Position numbers and translations under genes: made by a program. Below are positions 124-10,599 of a stretch of 64,000 nt of DNA, piece by piece (positions within the stretch are counted from its first letter, which is position 1; every line of letters starts with the position of its first letter). The stretch covers positions 62,001-126,000 of the IMG/VR virus record IMGVR_UViG_3300006931_000029; one strand, written 5' to 3'. The notes beneath the pieces were generated by a model. The model searched no databases. It was given only the letters and a program-made list of their open reading frames with translations, and had not been told where the DNA came from.

Positions 124-209
124 TGGTGGCGAAAGAAGGGATCGAACCTCCGACCTGGTCGTCCATTTTTAAGGTGGCCGTCCATGCTCTACCGCTAAGC
201 TATTTCGCC
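124..209 (-). tRNA. atypical 86-nt tRNA with an anticodon stem extended by about 6 bp (apical loop CU-UAA-AA)
   Basis: Acceptor GGCGAAA/TTTCGCC-A-CCA, D arm GCTT-AGCGGTA-GAGC, T arm GGAGG-TTCGATC-CCTTC and a 4-nt variable region are normal. The anticodon arm is 29 nt rather than 17 nt. Confidence 0.75.
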
Positions 210-475: not shown

Positions 476-830
476 TGGTGGAGATGGCGGGAGTTGAACC
501 CGCGTGCTAAAAGAGAACCGAATCTGAGTCTACGCGCGTGTCCTATTTTAATGTCCAGGCGGACCTATCTTTGGCTGAGTTTTTGAGTTCCGCCTCAGCC
601 GGCAGCGAAATCAGTAGCGTAGTTTTTACGCAGCACGATCTACCCCGCTCATCTTAATCGTGCCACGCGCAGCCTAATTAGGCCGCGAGACGGAGCTCGT
701 TGGAACGAGCGAACGCCTTGACAATGGTGTTGCCATTTGTGGTTTGCCAAGTCTTGTTATGGAGGTCGACCTAGCAGTCTCCAGCGCGCATCAGGTATCT
801 GTCTCCTAAAGTAGAATCCAGAACATCCCC
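476..830 (-). ncRNA. ssrA: tmRNA (355 nt); probable tag (A)GNTIVKAFARSNELRLAA encoded at 678..734
   Basis: 5' end GGGGATGTTCTGGATTC and 3' end CGCGGGTTCAACTCCCGCCATCTCCACCA give an acceptor stem with a G3-U70 pair. A pk1-like pairing GCTAGGTC/GACTTGGC is present, and the short ORF ends in LAA-stop. Confidence 0.95.
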
Positions 831-927: not shown

Positions 928-1563
928 TCACGCATTTTGTTCAACTGGCCGAACGCCGTGAATTCCCTGCTTCAGGACATACCAGTAGAGTTTTCCTTCG
1001 AGTCGAATCTGGTTGGCGCGGCTCTTGTCGACGTAAATTTTGTCGCCGATCTTGATTTGGGCGAGCACCGGGTCTTCGCTCGATGGCAGAAGATTTCCGA
1101 TTTGCACGACCTCAAACTCTGGAGGTGGAATGGCCGAATCCGGCAGATAGAGACCGCCGATCATGTCGATCTTGATGTCACGAACGAGCACCCAGTCGCC
1201 GAGCACATGAAAATTTTCAAGCGTGATCTGCGGAGAATCCAGCTTCGCGAATGCGTCTCCTTGATGCATGATCATCACGGGCTGACGACGGTCACCTTCA
1301 CCGACAAAATGGGTCACGCCCATTTCGAACATCTTGTTGCATTGGTAGATGACGATGTCGCCGACCTTGACGGCAATTTCGACCGTGTCTCCGATGGACG
1401 CAACTCGGCCAAGCCGATGGACTTGGTTGGCATTGGAGGGCATCAGGATGATGCCAGTCGCTTCTTCCTGCACAGCGGTGAGAGCGACTCGGTGTTTGAC
1501 TGGACGCACGCAGCTTCTCAGGTCAATCTCTGCGGGTTTGAAAGGGACGACGTTGGAACTCAT
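928..1563 (-). CDS. groES: co-chaperonin with two tandem GroES/Cpn10 domains
   Basis: Two GroES-like repeats: RPVKHRVAL..TGIILMPSNA..GRVASIG..VKVGDIVIY and HVLGDWVLVR..IGGLYLPDSA..EVVQIG..IKIGDKIYV. Confidence 0.8.
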   Translation of the reverse strand: MSSNVVPFKPAEIDLRSCVRPVKHRVALTAVQEEATGIILMPSNANQVHRLGRVASIGDTVEIAVKVGDIVIYQCNKMFEMGVTHFVGEGDRRQPVMIMHQGDAFAKLDSPQITLENFHVLGDWVLVRDIKIDMIGGLYLPDSAIPPPEFEVVQIGNLLPSSEDPVLAQIKIGDKIYVDKSRANQIRLEGKLYWYVLKQGIHGVRPVEQNA

Positions 1564-6380: not shown

Positions 6381-6587
6381 TCACTTACCTTTGAACTTGT
6401 TCAACTCCTCTTTCTCGGCCTTTGCGGCTTCTTCCGCCCATTCTAGTAACCACGTCAGAGCGTAGTCAGGGGTCCTCAATAAGTCAATCGTCATGCCCCG
6501 GTTGCTGGAGGCGAGAATGAATCGCTCTCTCCAGCGAGCCTTTTCGTGGGCGAAGACCCCGTCAACGAAAAAAGTCAGCGTCGAGAT
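6381..6587 (-). CDS. gp51-like hub assembly ORF overlapping the gp26-like gene in the +1 frame, without a nearby ATG
   Basis: The open frame reads ISTLTFFVDGVFAHEKARWRERFILASSNRGMTIDLLRTPDYALTWLLEWAEEAAKAEKEELNKFKGK*. It is not in the ORF track and fills the gap exactly. Confidence 0.55.
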   Translation of the reverse strand: MSTLTFFVDGVFAHEKARWRERFILASSNRGMTIDLLRTPDYALTWLLEWAEEAAKAEKEELNKFKGK

Positions 6588-7314
6588 TTAGGTCGTGAGA
6601 GTACTGATTGCCACACGAGACGCACTTGTGCTTGATCTCGGTTCCGAGATGCGGCGTAAGCTTTTCCATCATCTCCGTGTAGTAGGAGAAATCAGCGGGT
6701 GGCAGAGCGTTGAAGTACGTGATTGCTTCGTCCGGCGTGTCAGGTGACGTCTCGTTGACTGCGACCAGAGCCGAAACTGCCCGAGTCATCTTGCTAGAGA
6801 CTTTGTCAGTTTCAGGGCGTTCCAACACGCCTAGTTCATCTCGAACCAAGAGAGGTCGAAGACGAATCTTGTCTTTGCAAACAGGAAGCGTGATCTCGTC
6901 GTAGCCCACGTAGTTGTCCGGCTTTTCAGAGATTTTCTCGAGGTTGTCAGGAACCACGAGTTTCACCTGTTCGACGTGACCGCATGATGGACATTTGCTG
7001 TCGTAGTTCAGCGATGAATCTCTGGCGAGTGCTCGCGCAACCAGCAGAATCGTGATGACGTCGCCGACGGGCATCGAGTCAACTTTGTCGAGGTTGATTA
7101 GTTTTTTCACCACCTCGAACGAGATGCGATCAACCGGCACAGTGCGGAGAGCTTTGATAACCCACTCGTCGACGCTTTGATCCCACGGATAGACCGTCAC
7201 CTTGCCGCCAGGCAGCTTGTCCGGCATGGAGTAACCATGAGACAGTAAGGTGATTTCCTTCTTGAACTTCTCTCGTGCCGGGGCGAGAGATTGCAGATTG
7301 GATTTGATGGCCAT
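6562..7314 (-). CDS. baseplate hub assembly protein (T4 gp26-like)
   Basis: GDVITILLVARA, CPSCG, KIRLRPLLVRDE, CVSCG and the terminal LDADFF. Start MAIKS (7314) is preferred because GTTCTA lies 6 nt upstream. Confidence 0.7.
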   Translation of the reverse strand: MAIKSNLQSLAPAREKFKKEITLLSHGYSMPDKLPGGKVTVYPWDQSVDEWVIKALRTVPVDRISFEVVKKLINLDKVDSMPVGDVITILLVARALARDSSLNYDSKCPSCGHVEQVKLVVPDNLEKISEKPDNYVGYDEITLPVCKDKIRLRPLLVRDELGVLERPETDKVSSKMTRAVSALVAVNETSPDTPDEAITYFNALPPADFSYYTEMMEKLTPHLGTEIKHKCVSCGNQYSHDLNLDADFFR

Positions 7315-7410: not shown

Positions 7411-7764
7411 TTACTCCTTTTTGTCGTCCGAATCGTCGTCATCATCGCCTTTGGACTTGTCGTCCTTCTTGGCGGGAGGAGCTTTCTTGTCGTCCTTCTT
7501 GTCGTCCTTCTTGGCGGGAGGAGCTTTCTTGTCGTCTTTCTTTCCGCCATCGACCTTCACGTCGGTGTCGGCCGTAACCGTTTCACCGCCGGACTTCAGC
7601 TTCACGCCGGCCGGCTTGTCCTTGGCGAGTTGCTTGAGCGCCTTCTGGATTTGCTTCGGGTTGCCGGTGATCTGAACGCTGACGGTGGCCTGTTCGCCAC
7701 CTTTCGGTGCGGCAGACTCGGCCTCGCCTTCGAAGATGGAGTCGATGAGTTCGCGTGATTTCAT
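7411..7764 (-). CDS. Lys/Asp-rich low-complexity protein with KKDDKKAPPA repeats
   Basis: 117 aa with a duplicated ~42-nt unit at about 7455-7540 and N-terminal LIDSIFEGE. It lies directly after the tube gene. Confidence 0.6.
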   Translation of the reverse strand: MKSRELIDSIFEGEAESAAPKGGEQATVSVQITGNPKQIQKALKQLAKDKPAGVKLKSGGETVTADTDVKVDGGKKDDKKAPPAKKDDKKDDKKAPPAKKDDKSKGDDDDDSDDKKE

Positions 7765-7793: not shown

Positions 7794-8477
7794 TTAGGCG
7801 ACTGAGCCTGGGTTGCGGAGACCAGCAAGGATGTTGGAGAGACCCATGCTTGGAAGATTGGCGAAGTTGACTGGGTTCAAATCGACAACCTTCTCAGGGT
7901 AATAACGATCGATCTGCAACGACACGGTGAGAGTGACACCTTGGTTGGCCTGGGTCATGTCGGCGTTCGACGGTTTCAGGTTTTTGATCCACACGCCTTC
8001 GAGACGGTAGCGAGCACCGAGCGTCATCACGTTCGTCTCGGTCGTGTCGTCGATGTTGGCCAACTTCTGCATGTTCGGCGTGAGCCAGAAGAAATAGCCG
8101 TTCGACTTGACTGCAGACGAAAGACCCACGCCGCCGTTGGCGGGGTTCGAGATGAGCCAATGCCAGCGCTCGAGAAGTTCTGCGGTGCGACGATTGAACG
8201 CGTAGCGAACCGTCATGTCGACCGTGCCTGAAGCAGTATCGCCACCAATTTGGTGGTTGGTCTGCTGGAGGTACTTGATCGGCATCGACTCACGAGCGCG
8301 ATCAGGGAAAGGAAATTCCTGCACCGCGAACGCGCACTCCTGATCCCACAAGCTCGACCCCTGCGCCTCGCGAAGGAGAGTCGGGAACGAGAGGAGGACG
8401 TAGAACAGGTCAGAGCGCTGCTGGTCGAGACCGGAGCCAGCCGCACCCCACTGGTTTTTGAAGTTGATGAGTCCCAT
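7794..8477 (-). CDS. tail tube protein (gp19-like)
   Basis: Follows the sheath gene; carries FPFPDR..MPIKY, ELLERWH and LEGVWIKNL motifs. Confidence 0.8.
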   Translation of the reverse strand: MGLINFKNQWGAAGSGLDQQRSDLFYVLLSFPTLLREAQGSSLWDQECAFAVQEFPFPDRARESMPIKYLQQTNHQIGGDTASGTVDMTVRYAFNRRTAELLERWHWLISNPANGGVGLSSAVKSNGYFFWLTPNMQKLANIDDTTETNVMTLGARYRLEGVWIKNLKPSNADMTQANQGVTLTVSLQIDRYYPEKVVDLNPVNFANLPSMGLSNILAGLRNPGSVA

Positions 8478-8511: not shown

Positions 8512-10599
8512 TTAGGCAGGAAGGTTGCTCGTGCCCACGTTCGAGAGGGTTGCACCCGACTTTTCCACCGTCGCCGTGATGATGAAGACTTCGGCGACGT
8601 CGATCGGGATGATCGCGAGGTCGACGATGACTTGACGAGCGTTGCGGGTGTCCGGGGTGTTGTTGGTGTCATCCAGCTGGATGGCGTAACCTTCAACACC
8701 ACGCTCGGACTTGACTGCCTCCATGAAGTTGGTGTAGTCCAGCTTCAGTTGTTGGAAGAGCACGTCGTCGATCGGGTCGAAGGTGTAGCGGCGAGCGATA
8801 TTCGCGAAGCCCTTGAGGATGTAGTTCACGAGCACCACGTTGTGGATAGCCGTGAGCTTGCTCTCGGTACGTTGCAGCGTGCGATCGCCGTAGATTTCGA
8901 TGGAGTTGCCAAGCAGCAACACCGGATTCACCGAGTTGCCATTGCCATACATGGCATTCTTGACGTCCAAAGAAACGTACTTGTAGCGAACTTTCTGCGC
9001 CTCGGGAATGACGCCGCGGATGTCACCTGCGACAGCCTTCCATGGCTTGTCGAGGTCGAAAGTGCGGGCAGCGCAACGGAGATAACCGAGCGACGGTGGC
9101 ACGTATTTCTGAACGCCAGTGAACGTGTCGCTGATTTGGAACCAGTTCCAGAAGAGACACATCCGGTAGTTGTCGATGCGGCCGTTGGCGGAGTAGAGAC
9201 CCGTGCCATTGTGCCAGTCGATAGCGTCGCGAGCGTTGAGATTGTCAGGGATATTGCCCACGCCAATCGCGTTGACCTTGCCGGCGATGCGGGCAATTTC
9301 CTGGTAGACCGCAATCGAGGTGGAATCCGGAACAGCAATGAAATCAACGTCAACCTCATCCGAGTCGGACCGCTCGAACAGCTTCAAGCCGGTCGGCGTA
9401 TCGTCGTTCGGGTCGATGGTGCCGATGTAGTCCTGGTCGGTCACGTTCTCGCCATTGAATCCGCCAGAGAATTCCGCCAAGTTCGACGGCGTGCCAATCG
9501 TGAGATTCCACGGGTTGTACGTGTTGCCTGGAGGCTCCGATCCGAAGACGTGGAAGATCGAGATGTAGCTCGACTTGCCGTTGATGCGAGTCGTGTAGAA
9601 GTTGTCGCTCGCTGGGTCGTTCGAGAGATTGTCGATGCTTTCCACCAACACCGATCCCTGATAGACCAGGAATTTCTTGGTGTCCGGCGCAGAGCCAGGA
9701 GCAACTTGGAGGGTGATGCCCGTCGACTGGCCTTGGGTGTTGGCCCAAGTTCCCGCTGAGTTTGCGAAAACCTGCATCGCATCGGCAGTGGACTGAGCGG
9801 TGACCTTGTAAACAGTCGCACCCGTGTAGCTATCCTGCAGAGGGAGGGCTTGGTAACCGACGTCCGTCTGGTTGGAGGTGTAGAAGAGGATGTCGCCGTT
9901 GGCGCGAACCTCGGACACCTTGATTTCGCGAGTCGTCGAACGATTCGTCTGGGAAACTTTCAGCGTGTCGCCCACCGAGATGTTGGCGTACGTGCCGCTG
10001 ACATTGATCTTGAAAGCGTTTTTGTCGCCGACAACCGTGCCCAAGCCGGTAACGGCAGAGCCGTAGGTCGGAGCGCTGAGGAACGCTTCGGCTTCATTGG
10101 CCGCGTTGGCAGACTCGGACCGACCAACCGTTGCACCGTTGTAGGTGTCAGCAAGAGCGACAGCTTCGCTGCCGACCGACACGAGGGTAATCGTGGTACC
10201 AGCAATTGAGTCGATCTTGGCATTCGGCGTGGTGATCTTGCTCGGTTGACGAACGCGAAGGTAATCACCGGGCGAGAAGAGACTCGCGTTTGGCGTGATG
10301 AGCGAGTAGGTTCCGGTCGAGCCAGAGGCGTTGTTGGACGCCGTCGTGGCGTATTGCTGACCGACGCGAACCACTCGGCAACCATCGCTCGAGTTGGAAA
10401 TCATCGCAACTGCATCGCCCACGAAGCTGCCTTCTAGGGGCGCACCGAATTTGCGGACGAACTCGAAGATGGATGGGCAATTGGTGACCGTGTCGAACTC
10501 GCCACGTTGGGCAATGCCCACGAGACCAGCGCGGAAACGGCTTGTCGGCGTGGTGACTTGGCTGTTGTCGACGACCCTGGTGATGACTTGAGGAAACAT
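8512..10599 (-). CDS. tail sheath protein (gp18-like)
   Basis: FPQVITRVVDNS, GLVGIAQRG, FVRKFG, YVPPS, WKAVAG..RG, VNPV, IYGDRTLQ and CVII-like C-terminus with IIPIDVAEVFII. Confidence 0.92.
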   Translation of the reverse strand: MFPQVITRVVDNSQVTTPTSRFRAGLVGIAQRGEFDTVTNCPSIFEFVRKFGAPLEGSFVGDAVAMISNSSDGCRVVRVGQQYATTASNNASGSTGTYSLITPNASLFSPGDYLRVRQPSKITTPNAKIDSIAGTTITLVSVGSEAVALADTYNGATVGRSESANAANEAEAFLSAPTYGSAVTGLGTVVGDKNAFKINVSGTYANISVGDTLKVSQTNRSTTREIKVSEVRANGDILFYTSNQTDVGYQALPLQDSYTGATVYKVTAQSTADAMQVFANSAGTWANTQGQSTGITLQVAPGSAPDTKKFLVYQGSVLVESIDNLSNDPASDNFYTTRINGKSSYISIFHVFGSEPPGNTYNPWNLTIGTPSNLAEFSGGFNGENVTDQDYIGTIDPNDDTPTGLKLFERSDSDEVDVDFIAVPDSTSIAVYQEIARIAGKVNAIGVGNIPDNLNARDAIDWHNGTGLYSANGRIDNYRMCLFWNWFQISDTFTGVQKYVPPSLGYLRCAARTFDLDKPWKAVAGDIRGVIPEAQKVRYKYVSLDVKNAMYGNGNSVNPVLLLGNSIEIYGDRTLQRTESKLTAIHNVVLVNYILKGFANIARRYTFDPIDDVLFQQLKLDYTNFMEAVKSERGVEGYAIQLDDTNNTPDTRNARQVIVDLAIIPIDVAEVFIITATVEKSGATLSNVGTSNLPA

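What the first reader, a model, noticed from the sequence alone, without database searches (positions are those of the whole stretch)
6381..6600. Possible +1/-2 frameshift joining gp26-like and gp51-like ORFs at GAC-UUU-UUU-CGU-UGA
Seen: the hub gene ends DADFFR* across a U6 run (6568-6573). The +1 frame is open from 6587 to 6381 and encodes a gp51-like peptide (FAHE..W..F.L....G...L..TP...LLE..EE). It has no ATG, GTG or TTG before an internal Met 37 aa from the end; only a CTG at 6578 is available. Established: tail chaperone G/GT pairs use programmed -1 (lambda, P2) or -2 (Mu) shifts. Inference: the same mechanism may operate on a T4-type hub-assembly pair, with internal Met or CTG initiation as alternatives.
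Basis: partly seen in the sequence, partly recalled or inferred. Interest (0 to 1): 0.6.

Follow-up and report, generated by a model that had tools for sequence, protein, structure and literature searches.

The report
Frameshifted tail chaperone in soil phage
A T4-like soil phage appears to make a short and a long version of its tail/hub assembly chaperone from one gene by slipping forward one base at a run of six U's; the two-protein principle is already published, but the forward (+1) direction is an unusual variant.

Summary
On the minus strand a gp26/gp51-family gene (Pfam T4_baseplate, 7314..6562) ends ..DADFFR-TGA across TTTTTT (6573..6568). The +1 frame (6587..6381) encodes a 61-residue peptide with no usable start codon.

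In 100 non-identical related contigs (34-100% protein identity, 42-67% GC), 99 keep TTTTTTCG. Phe elsewhere in the same genes is only 38% TTT. The +1 frame is always open for 145-193 nt, codon periodicity switches to +1 directly after the run, and 47 loci have no ATG/GTG/TTG at all there.

T4 has two genes of this family: gp26 (domain only) and gp51 (domain plus a 48-residue tail). This complete 225-kb phage has one. Cyanophage 'gp51' equals the T4 gp51 tail and sits behind gp26 at the same T6 run, but in the -1 frame.

The published reading of gp26/gp51 as short and long tail assembly chaperones (Vladimirov et al. 2022) therefore fits. I found only the -1 version described.

I favour a +1 ribosomal slip of tRNA-Phe at UUU_C, because two variants keep UUU_Y without T6. 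Transcriptional slippage and a -2 shift are not excluded. There is no experimental evidence.

The parts
6562..7314 (-). Short-form ORF (250 aa, gp26-like hub assembly / tail assembly chaperone). ATG at 7314, stop TGA at 6564..6562, ends ..NLDADFFR.
   Evidence: Pfam PF12322 T4_baseplate E 3e-10, profile positions 45-218 of 219. phrog_150 'baseplate hub' positions 57-233 of 282. Homologues start MAIK/MPIK at this ATG. AF2 pLDDT 89.7. Top structural matches are YqbN 3klu (Z 7.3) and HK97 TAC 2ob9 (Z 6.4).
6565..6573 (-). Recoding site UUU_UUU_CGU. T6 run at 6573..6568, followed by C at 6567 and G at 6566. The proposed event is a slip of P-site tRNA-Phe from UUU (6570..6568) to UUC (6569..6567).
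   Evidence: TTTTTTCG is present in 99 of 100 unique loci. Phe TTT usage elsewhere in these genes is 0.376. The codon before the run is GAC 36: GAT 1. No indels in 4 independent DNA runs.
6384..6566 (-). +1-frame tail (61 codons, VDGVFAHEK...KFKGK) that would be added after ..DADFF to give a 310-aa long form. Stop TGA at 6383..6381.
   Evidence: The +1 frame is open 145-193 nt past the site in all 100 loci. Consensus FVxAAxxxxExRWRxxFxLAWxxxGLxxDLxxVPD. Information per codon position is 0.84/0.84/0.27 bits when phased on +1. AF2 of the tail alignment gives pLDDT 87.4, helix 2-21, loop, helix 35-60.
6381..6587 (-). Whole open stretch of the +1 frame. It is bounded upstream by TAA at 6590..6588.
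   Evidence: In 57 of 100 loci the +1 frame opens no more than 7 codons before the end of FFR.
6576..6578 (-). CTG proposed as an alternative start. It is not conserved.
   Evidence: It is CTA in L002 and different codons in L003 and L004.
6492..6494 (-). Internal ATG (Met 37 codons from the end). It is not a conserved start.
   Evidence: The position is L, F, V or M in homologues (GLTL, GFSV, GMTI). Starting here would omit the conserved RW helix.

Best explanation
The gene at 7314..6562 is the single tail/hub assembly chaperone gene of a T4-like phage. Standard decoding gives a 250-aa short form, the counterpart of T4 gp26. A minority of ribosomes change frame at UUU_UUU_CGU. With the second UUU in the P site, tRNA-Phe re-pairs one base forward on UUC. 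Decoding then continues with GUU GAC GGG and adds a 61-residue helical hairpin. The result is a 310-aa long form (..DADFF-VDGVFAHEK..), the counterpart of T4 gp51 (chaperone domain plus C-terminal tail). By analogy with lambda G/GT, both forms would carry the chaperone domain and only the long form would carry the extra docking module. Shown here: the two-frame architecture, nucleotide-level conservation of the site, purifying selection on the +1 frame, absence of a start codon, one family gene here versus two in T4, and a TAC-like fold. Inferred: that the frame change is ribosomal and +1, its efficiency, and what the tail binds. My confidence that some recoding at the U-run fuses the two frames is about 0.85. 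My confidence in the +1 ribosomal mechanism specifically is the figure given below.
For: 1) Site conservation. 99 of 100 unique loci carry TTTTTTCG, against 38% TTT at other Phe codons and mixed codons at other invariant residues.
2) Selection on the +1 frame. It is always open for 145-193 nt, whereas the 0-frame stop lies anywhere from 0 to 53 codons after FFR. The conserved RWR motif lies upstream of the 0-frame stop in L003 and L004, which rules out termination-reinitiation. Codon periodicity follows +1 even where the 0 frame runs on.
3) No start codon. 47 of 100 loci have no start codon and none is conserved. A profile search of 1.84 billion proteins finds only short, raggedly started ORF calls and no in-frame hub+tail fusion.
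4) Gene count. The complete own genome has one PF12322 gene and T4 has two. T4 gp26 is the domain alone. T4 gp51 is the domain plus a 48-aa tail.
5) The tail is separable. Cyanophage 'gp51' (57 aa) is homologous to the T4 gp51 tail (phrog_634 and phrog_150 positions 234-281; hhalign 97%). It sits behind gp26 at the same T6 run.
6) Where two genes exist, the run is absent. T4 gene 26 encodes FF as TTC TTT.
7) Direction and ribosomal nature. UUU_Y is a known +1-prone site in bacteria, and UCC_UUU_CGU is the influenza PA-X +1 site (PMC5009743). Two clade members lack T6 but keep UUU_Y in the hub frame with the tail in +1: L101 GAG_TTT_CTT and L258 CCC_TTT_TCT.
8) The hub model resembles tail assembly chaperones.
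Against: There is no protein, RNA or ribosome-profiling data. No RNA run holds this phage. The strict T6 in 99% of loci is more than a UUU_C slip needs. The same T6-C(G) is used by cyanophage-type relatives for the opposite direction (-1), which could point to a mechanism that does not depend on phase, such as polymerase slippage. No conserved stimulator was found: no downstream RNA structure, no SD-like element in 71% of loci, and CGT is not a rare Arg codon in this phage (20%). The two non-T6 variants are single lineages, and each has upstream TTG or ATG codons in the +1 frame. Homology of the tail to Gp51_C is not significant. The tape-measure gene is not adjacent.
Confidence: 0.55

Rival explanations
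1. Transcriptional slippage. RNA polymerase occasionally drops one U (U6 to U5) or adds two while copying the T6 run. A subset of mRNAs then encodes the hub+tail fusion in a single frame. The protein would be identical to the +1 product.
For: The motif conserved across very distant clades is the homopolymer itself. It serves a +1 frame relation here and a -1 relation in cyanophage, Aeromonas, Vibrio and Desulfovibrio phages. A direction-agnostic insertion/deletion mechanism would explain that. Run length looks controlled: GAC 36 versus GAT 1 before the run. No ribosomal stimulator was found. The title of Vladimirov et al. [quoted passage not shown]
Against: L101 (T3) and L258 (T4) keep the two-frame arrangement without a slippery homopolymer. 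In each clade the run sits in exactly the phase a ribosomal slip needs: U_UUU_UUC for -1 and UUU_C for +1. Avoidance of GAT is also explained by avoiding a U_UUU_UUU -1 heptamer.
Confidence: 0.25
2. A -2 ribosomal frameshift. tRNA-Phe on the second UUU slips back two bases onto UUU, and decoding resumes at UUC GUU. The product is ..DADFFFVDG.. with one extra Phe.
For: A full U6 allows perfect re-pairing at -2, which would explain why T6 rather than just UUU_C is conserved. U6A supports -2 shifts in vitro (PMC3458567).
Against: The documented -2 events need a closely spaced downstream structure or a protein factor, and none is conserved here. Variants L101 and L258 cannot re-pair at -2 (AGU and CCU).
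Confidence: 0.08
3. Independent initiation of the small ORF at a non-canonical codon (CTG 6578, ATC 6587) or at the internal ATG 6494, giving a free gp51-like peptide as annotated in some cyanophages.
For: About half of the cyanophage-type relatives do have ATG or TTG five codons after the run. GXN1 has an internal ATG with a GAGG Shine-Dalgarno sequence. Gene callers do produce short ORF calls here.
Against: No start codon is conserved, and 47 of 100 loci have none. The CTG is not conserved. Amino-acid conservation (FFV-D/E-AA) begins at the run itself. In 57 loci a stop lies no more than 7 codons upstream. The internal Met would remove helix 1.
Confidence: 0.07
4. Artefact or decay: a sequencing error in a homopolymer, or a pseudogenised fusion gene.
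For: Homopolymers are error-prone in some sequencing chemistries.
Against: One hundred unique contigs from many studies share the arrangement. Four independent runs show no indel. Both frames are under purifying selection.
Confidence: 0.02

Closest known systems
T4 gp26 / gp51 as the tail assembly chaperone pair of T4-like phages (Vladimirov, Gautam and Davidson 2022, Virology 566:9). The paper is not held in the library. It is known here only through PMC10885494 and PMC12846349.
   Same: Same protein family (PF12322). Same logic of a short form plus a long form carrying an extra C-terminal module. A poly-T tract sits at the end of the N-terminal gene. PMC12846349 states that such poly-T sequences are known -1 signals in TAC-N genes of T4-like phages.
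   Different: T4 itself uses two separate genes and has no T6. The poly-T cases I could inspect (S-PM2, ACG-2014j, AS-sw, R11Z, RL2RES, Desulfovibrio 7757) all place the tail in the -1 frame with a U_UUU_UUC/G heptamer. Here the tail is in the +1 frame with UUU_UUU_CGU. The tail sequence is not recognisably Gp51_C.
Lambda G/GT and P2 E/E+E' tail assembly chaperone frameshifts
   Same: Two overlapping ORFs, with the second lacking a start. The slippery site lies near the end of the first ORF. Neither product is expected in the virion. The gene follows the sheath and tube genes as in P2/Mu-type myophages. The fold is related to the HK97 TAC.
   Different: Those shifts are -1 at X_XXY_YYZ. Here the tape-measure gene is not the next gene (the next gene is a 5'-3' exonuclease). 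The chaperone domain here is a duplicated module of about 250 aa with four Cys, not a protein of about 100-140 aa.
UUU_Y +1 shift sites: E. coli UUU_Ynn, Yersinia YopN-TyeA, influenza A PA-X UCC_UUU_CGU (PMC5009743)
   Same: A 0-frame UUU followed by a pyrimidine. The core UUU_CGU is identical to the PA-X cassette. The product is a C-terminally extended fusion.
   Different: Here the site is preceded by a second UUU, giving U6. CGU is not rare in this phage. No experimental measurement exists.
Haloarchaeal myovirus HSTV-2 tail chaperone, 'very likely +1' (PMC5009743)
   Same: A tail chaperone long form reached through the +1 frame in a myovirus.
   Different: Archaeal host and an unrelated sequence. 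I did not inspect its site.

Membership tests
T4_baseplate (PF12322; T4 gp26/gp51 family) | Match to the family HMM above the curated cut-off | tested here: met
   40.6 bits against a cut-off of 24.5, E 3e-10, profile positions 45-218 of 219. phrog_150 E 2.9e-11.
T4_baseplate (PF12322; T4 gp26/gp51 family) | The domain ends at the aromatic FF motif that follows the second CxxC | tested here: met
   C231, C234, F248 and F249 are invariant in A1. T4 gp26 ends KCPECG..KEFFELL.
Frameshifted tail assembly chaperone (lambda G/GT type) | Two overlapping ORFs, the second without its own start and conserved across relatives | tested here: met
   100 of 100 loci have the +1 ORF, and 47 have no start codon at all.
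Frameshifted tail assembly chaperone (lambda G/GT type) | Conserved slippery sequence in the overlap | tested here: met
   TTTTTTCG in 99 of 100 loci against a 38% TTT background.
Frameshifted tail assembly chaperone (lambda G/GT type) | -1 direction at an X_XXY_YYZ heptamer | tested here: not met
   The tail is in the +1 frame, and the run is in phase UUU_UUU_C.
Frameshifted tail assembly chaperone (lambda G/GT type) | TAC fold | tested here: met
   VIA-align: YqbN 3klu Z 7.3 (99 aligned residues) and HK97 TAC 2ob9 Z 6.4 (87 aligned). The next unrelated row is Z 3.6. Foldseek gives 2ob9 probability 0.77 but E 0.6. Z values are moderate.
Frameshifted tail assembly chaperone (lambda G/GT type) | Located between the tail tube gene and the tape-measure gene | tested here: inconclusive
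   The order on the minus strand is sheath, tube, a 117-aa protein, then this gene. The downstream gene is a 5'-3' exonuclease, not a tape measure. I did not locate the tape measure.
Frameshifted tail assembly chaperone (lambda G/GT type) | Both products made in a fixed ratio and required for tail assembly | not testable with these tools
   This needs expression and genetics.
Gp51_C / phrog_634 (C-terminal tail of T4 gp51; cyanophage 'gp51') | Significant sequence-profile match | tested here: not met
   No PHROG hit at E<=1 for five soil-clade tails: the window's own and four others. hhalign against T-even gp51: probability 0.1-0.2. Against cyanophage tails: probability 9-31%, collinear end to end. 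HMMER over 1.84 billion proteins reaches no gp51-length protein. An Atlas feature hit to a PF28602 cluster at 0.91 is only a lead. PF28602 is not in the local Pfam copy.
Gp51_C / phrog_634 (C-terminal tail of T4 gp51; cyanophage 'gp51') | A helical module of about 50-60 aa directly after the PF12322 domain, joined at the FF motif | tested here: met
UUU_Y +1 ribosomal shift sites | 0-frame UUU followed by a pyrimidine, with the extension in +1 | tested here: met
   UUU_UUU_CGU. Variants UUU_CUU and UUU_UCU.
UUU_Y +1 ribosomal shift sites | Slowly decoded A-site codon or another stimulator | tested here: inconclusive
   CGT is 20% of Arg codons in the window. No SD-like element in 71% of loci. 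No conserved structure. Host tRNA pools are unknown.
Programmed transcriptional slippage | A homopolymer long enough for polymerase slippage (usually 8-9 or more; own knowledge) | tested here: not met
   The run is exactly 6, and extension to 7 is avoided (GAT 1 of 37 Asp codons). Variants have T3 and T4. Low-level slippage at T6 cannot be excluded.

The most novel reading that the evidence does not exclude
The T6-C(G) junction is one ancient recoding signal of the whole T4 superfamily. It delivers the long chaperone form whichever frame the tail lies in: -1 in cyanophage, Aeromonas, Vibrio and Desulfovibrio phages, and +1 in this soil/freshwater clade. That would mean either polymerase slippage in both directions at a run of only six U's, or a ribosomal site that evolution flipped from -1 to +1 without changing its letters. 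In either case T4's separate gp26 and gp51 would be the derived, 'resolved' state.
Probability: 0.2. Interest if true: 0.75.

Novelty: new variant of a known kind. Interest (0 to 1): 0.55.

Why it matters
T4-type phages were long the exception among long-tailed phages in lacking a recognised frameshifted tail chaperone, and the roles of gp26 and gp51 were obscure for decades.

This locus is a natural experiment. One gene here does what two genes do in T4, which supports the short/long chaperone model for the hub.

It also adds a clean, deeply conserved candidate for +1 frameshifting at UUU_UUU_CGU in bacteria. Conserved +1 sites are rare and hard to find.

There is a practical annotation consequence. 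The tail ORF is left unannotated in GenBank records such as Synechococcus phage ACG-2014j and Aeromonas phage AS-sw. In metagenomes it is called as ragged 31-91-aa fragments. A tblastn search with one cyanophage tail matched 573 phage records, and in some of the listed rows the only feature under the match is the hub gene.

Comparing the +1 and -1 clades gives a direct handle on whether the shared T6 acts at the ribosome or at the polymerase.

Tried and rejected
1) Direct family assignment of the +1 peptide. Pfam and PHROGs gave nothing for the window's tail or for four other soil tails. tblastn against 50,697 phage records gave nothing.

2) hhalign of the tail profile against T4 gp51 and against a T-even gp51 alignment gave nothing. 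Against cyanophage tails the result was weak.

3) A Foldseek search of the tail model against viral structures had no match with E <= 0.001 (best E 1.9), as expected for a helical hairpin. The Atlas structure library was unavailable.

4) Folding the fused 310-aa protein. I did not send it to any other tool. No model of the fusion exists, so whether the tail packs on the chaperone domain is untested.

What the tail binds remains pure analogy.

6) RNA evidence. No RNA run holds the locus, and all holders are DNA contigs.

7) Search for a stimulatory element. There is no conserved downstream structure and no consistent SD-like sequence.

8) Search for a natural in-frame hub+tail fusion in this clade. 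None appeared among 32 word-search hits or in the profile search.

9) Streptococcus phage vB_SagM-GXN1 as support for +1. It has TTC_TTT_CGT and a +1 ORF with a gp51-like segment, but also an internal ATG with a good Shine-Dalgarno sequence. I treat it as ambiguous.

10) Close relatives of the non-T6 variant L101. None were found in IMG/VR.

11) DNA for P0019 (which ends ..FFSAAQSTT) could not be fetched.

12) PF28602 could not be searched because it is absent from the local Pfam copy.

Full report
WHAT IS THERE. The feature lies on the minus strand. An ORF from ATG 7314 to TGA 6564..6562 encodes a 250-aa protein ending ..NLDADFFR. The two Phe codons are TTT TTT (6573..6568), followed by CGT TGA. 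The +1 frame is open from 6587 to the stop at 6383..6381. It has no ATG, GTG or TTG before the ATG at 6494.

The protein is a member of Pfam T4_baseplate (PF12322, E 3e-10, profile positions 45-218 of 219) and of phrog_150 (positions 57-233 of 282). The +1 peptide matches no Pfam or PHROG family and nothing in 50,697 phage records.

The window belongs to a complete 224,954-bp virus record with terminal repeats. It holds a T4-like tail module. On the minus strand the order is sheath (10599..8512), tube (8477..7794), a Lys/Asp-rich 117-aa protein, this gene, and then a 5'-3' exonuclease.

COMPARATIVE TEST. Protein and locus searches gave 152 loci from IMG/VR and JGI metagenomes, of which 103 are unique around the junction and 100 are complete. 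Hub proteins are 34-100% identical and their genes are 42-67% GC.

- 99 of the 100 carry TTTTTTCG at the FFR codons.
- Phe codons elsewhere in the same genes are 277 TTT to 459 TTC.
- Other invariant residues with two-fold codons are mixed: D45 GAT 43 / GAC 56, C231 TGC 74 / TGT 25, Y135 TAC 45 / TAT 42.
- The flanking codons vary synonymously (GAC, GAG, GAA; CGT, CGA, CGC). A T directly before the run is avoided: GAC 36 against GAT 1.
- The 0-frame stop lies anywhere from 0 to 53 codons after FFR. The +1 frame is open for 145-193 nt in every locus, and the +2 frame is not.
- Information content per codon position over the 60 nt after the site is 0.84/0.84/0.27 bits when phased on the +1 frame. 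This holds even in the 31 loci whose 0 frame runs on.
- Amino-acid conservation starts at the run itself: FF-V-(D/E/R/Q)-A-A ... RWR..F.LAW...G....L..VPD.
- In L003 and L004 the conserved RWR motif is encoded upstream of the 0-frame stop, so termination-reinitiation is excluded.
- 47 of 100 loci have no ATG/GTG/TTG in the +1 frame from the upstream stop to +36 nt. In 57 the frame opens no more than 7 codons before the end of FFR. Start codons, where present, are scattered.
- Four independent DNA runs cover the run without indels.

The two-frame arrangement and the T-run are therefore under selection, and the tail has no way to be translated except through a change of frame.

WHAT THE TWO PRODUCTS CORRESPOND TO. 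T4 has two PF12322 genes. gp26 (208 aa) is the domain alone and ends KEFFELL. gp51 (249 aa) is the domain (residues 1-201) plus a 48-residue tail. The phage of this window has only one such gene, both by the Pfam model and by a clade-specific profile.

In Synechococcus phage S-PM2, gp26 is followed at once by a 57-aa ORF annotated 'gp51'. That ORF is homologous to the T4 gp51 tail only. It matches phrog_634 at E 2e-27 and phrog_150 positions 240-281. The T4 tail matches phrog_150 positions 234-281 at E 2.5e-20. In-box hhalign of cyanophage tails against T-even tails gives 97% probability, E 1e-11. The window's hub stops matching phrog_150 at position 233, exactly where that tail begins.

So the short form corresponds to gp26 and the long form to gp51. 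Leiman et al. 2010 list both T4 proteins as hub assembly chaperones (PMC3004832). Vladimirov, Gautam and Davidson (2022) identified them as the tail assembly chaperones of T4-like phages. I could not read that paper. PMC10885494 summarises it as follows: some T4-like phages carry one short gene and one longer fused gene instead of frameshifting. PMC12846349 cites it for poly-T -1 signals in the TAC-N genes of T4-like phages.

Independent support comes from structure. The AlphaFold model of the hub (pLDDT 89.7) has as its best structural neighbours B. subtilis prophage YqbN (3klu, Z 7.3) and the HK97 tail assembly chaperone (2ob9, Z 6.4). These stand well above unrelated rows at Z 3.6 or less. 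The tail alignment alone folds confidently (pLDDT 87.4) as helix, loop, helix.

The direct link between this clade's tail and Gp51_C is weak. hhalign gives 9-31% probability with an end-to-end collinear alignment. There is no HMMER link. A language-model neighbour carries PF28602 Gp51_C and another carries P2 GpE, both at score 0.91, which I treat as leads only. I therefore call the tail gp51-like by position, size, fold class and junction, not by demonstrated homology.

THE WIDER PATTERN. In 64 cyanophage-like IMG/VR loci the junction is again TTTTTTC, mostly followed by G. There the hub frame reads NNT TTT TTC GNN stop, and the tail lies in the -1 frame, reading TTT TTT CGN. That is a textbook U_UUU_UUC heptamer. 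18 of 39 unique tails have no start codon at or before codon 6, and some have a stop directly before the run.

Aeromonas phage AS-sw, Vibrio phage R11Z, Rhizobium phage RL2RES (TTTTTTG) and Desulfovibrio phage 7757 show the same -1 layout. In GenBank the tail is either annotated as a separate small 'gp51' or left as an unannotated gap, as in ACG-2014j and AS-sw. A tblastn search with one tail finds 573 phage records. T4, with two separate genes, has no T6: gene 26 encodes FF as TTC TTT. The clade of this window is thus the +1 counterpart of a widespread -1 system.

MECHANISM. Three ways of reaching the +1 frame fit U6-C.

(a) A +1 slip of P-site tRNA-Phe from UUU to UUC. UUU_Ynn is known to be unusually +1-prone in bacteria. 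It is the proposed YopN-TyeA site, and UCC_UUU_CGU is the influenza PA-X cassette (PMC5009743).

(b) Loss of one U, or gain of two, by RNA polymerase.

(c) A -2 slip, documented on U6A in vitro (PMC3458567).

Two clade members discriminate between these. L101 has GAG_TTT_CTT_CAT and L258 has CCC_TTT_TCT. Both lack the homopolymer, keep UUU followed by a pyrimidine in the hub frame, and keep a conserved tail in +1. These fit (a) only. Both are single lineages with possible upstream starts, so the weight is limited.

Against (a), I found no stimulator. There is no conserved downstream structure, no SD-like element in 71% of loci, and CGT is not rare. The strict T6, shared with the -1 clades, is also more than (a) needs.

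My estimates are (a) 0.55, (b) 0.25, (c) 0.08, independent initiation 0.07 and artefact 0.02.

LIMITS. There are no expression data of any kind. The complex test of tail against tube was not available. What the tail binds, and the tape-measure partner, are inferred from lambda G/GT only. I could not read the 2022 paper, so some +1 cases may already be described there.

VERDICT. This is a member of the published T4-type chaperone system, in a +1 configuration that I did not find described: a new variant of a known kind.

Noticed in passing
window 476..830 (-) and 127..209 (-): The phage carries a tmRNA gene. ARAGORN gives the tag peptide GNTIVKAFARSNELRLAA, and Rfam RF00023 scores 95 bits, E 1.4e-36. 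Next to it is a tRNA-like gene found by Rfam (48 bits) but not called by ARAGORN.
   Followed up: partly
L243 (Synechococcus phage ACG-2014j) 914..1097; L244 (Aeromonas phage AS-sw) 914..1080: In deposited genomes of cultured T4-like phages, the gp51-like tail ORF behind the hub gene has no start codon and is left as an unannotated gap. It is reachable by a -1 shift at U_UUU_UUC. 18 of 39 unique cyanophage-like tails lack a start.
   Followed up: partly
L251 (= L019) about 1505..1520: One relative has an in-frame TAG inside the hub gene (..RCSEC*FEFRHQLNLDSDFFR..) while keeping the T6 site and the +1 tail. This could be an error, a polymorphism or stop-codon recoding. I did not resolve it.
   Followed up: no
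L037, L043, L140, L038, L145, L107, L042 (junction + 150 nt): In one subclade the hub 0 frame runs on for 30-53 codons past FFR and overlaps the whole +1 tail ORF. The short form there would carry a long Gly/Pro/Arg-rich extension. Codon periodicity still follows the +1 frame.
   Followed up: partly
window 6562..7314 (-); alignments A1 and A3: The chaperone domain looks like an internal duplication. The C-terminal half of the soil-clade profile aligns to the N-terminal half of T-even gp51, and each half carries a CxxC pair (hhalign). The four Cys are invariant or nearly so (at least 90%), which suggests a zinc site.
   Followed up: no
P0177 (261 aa, metagenome): One database protein joins a tail of this family (residues 6-60) to the downstream 5'-3' exonuclease in a single ORF call starting at TTG. 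This is either a gene-calling artefact or loss of the tail's stop codon.
   Followed up: no
window 7411..7764 (-): Between the tube gene and the chaperone gene lies a 117-aa protein with a repeated, highly charged stretch (..KKDDKKAPPAKKDDKKDDKKAPPAKKDDK..DDDDDSDD). It has no significant family match (no Pfam match with E <= 0.001 at the E <= 1 limit used; best E 0.052).
   Followed up: no
L157 (Streptococcus phage vB_SagM-GXN1) 2190..2476: A distant T4-like phage of a Gram-positive host has a single PF12322 gene ending TTC_TTT_CGT_CCC. It also has a 94-codon +1 ORF containing a gp51-like segment (FSLTYYGNYSVTDIESM). The record does not annotate it.
   Followed up: partly
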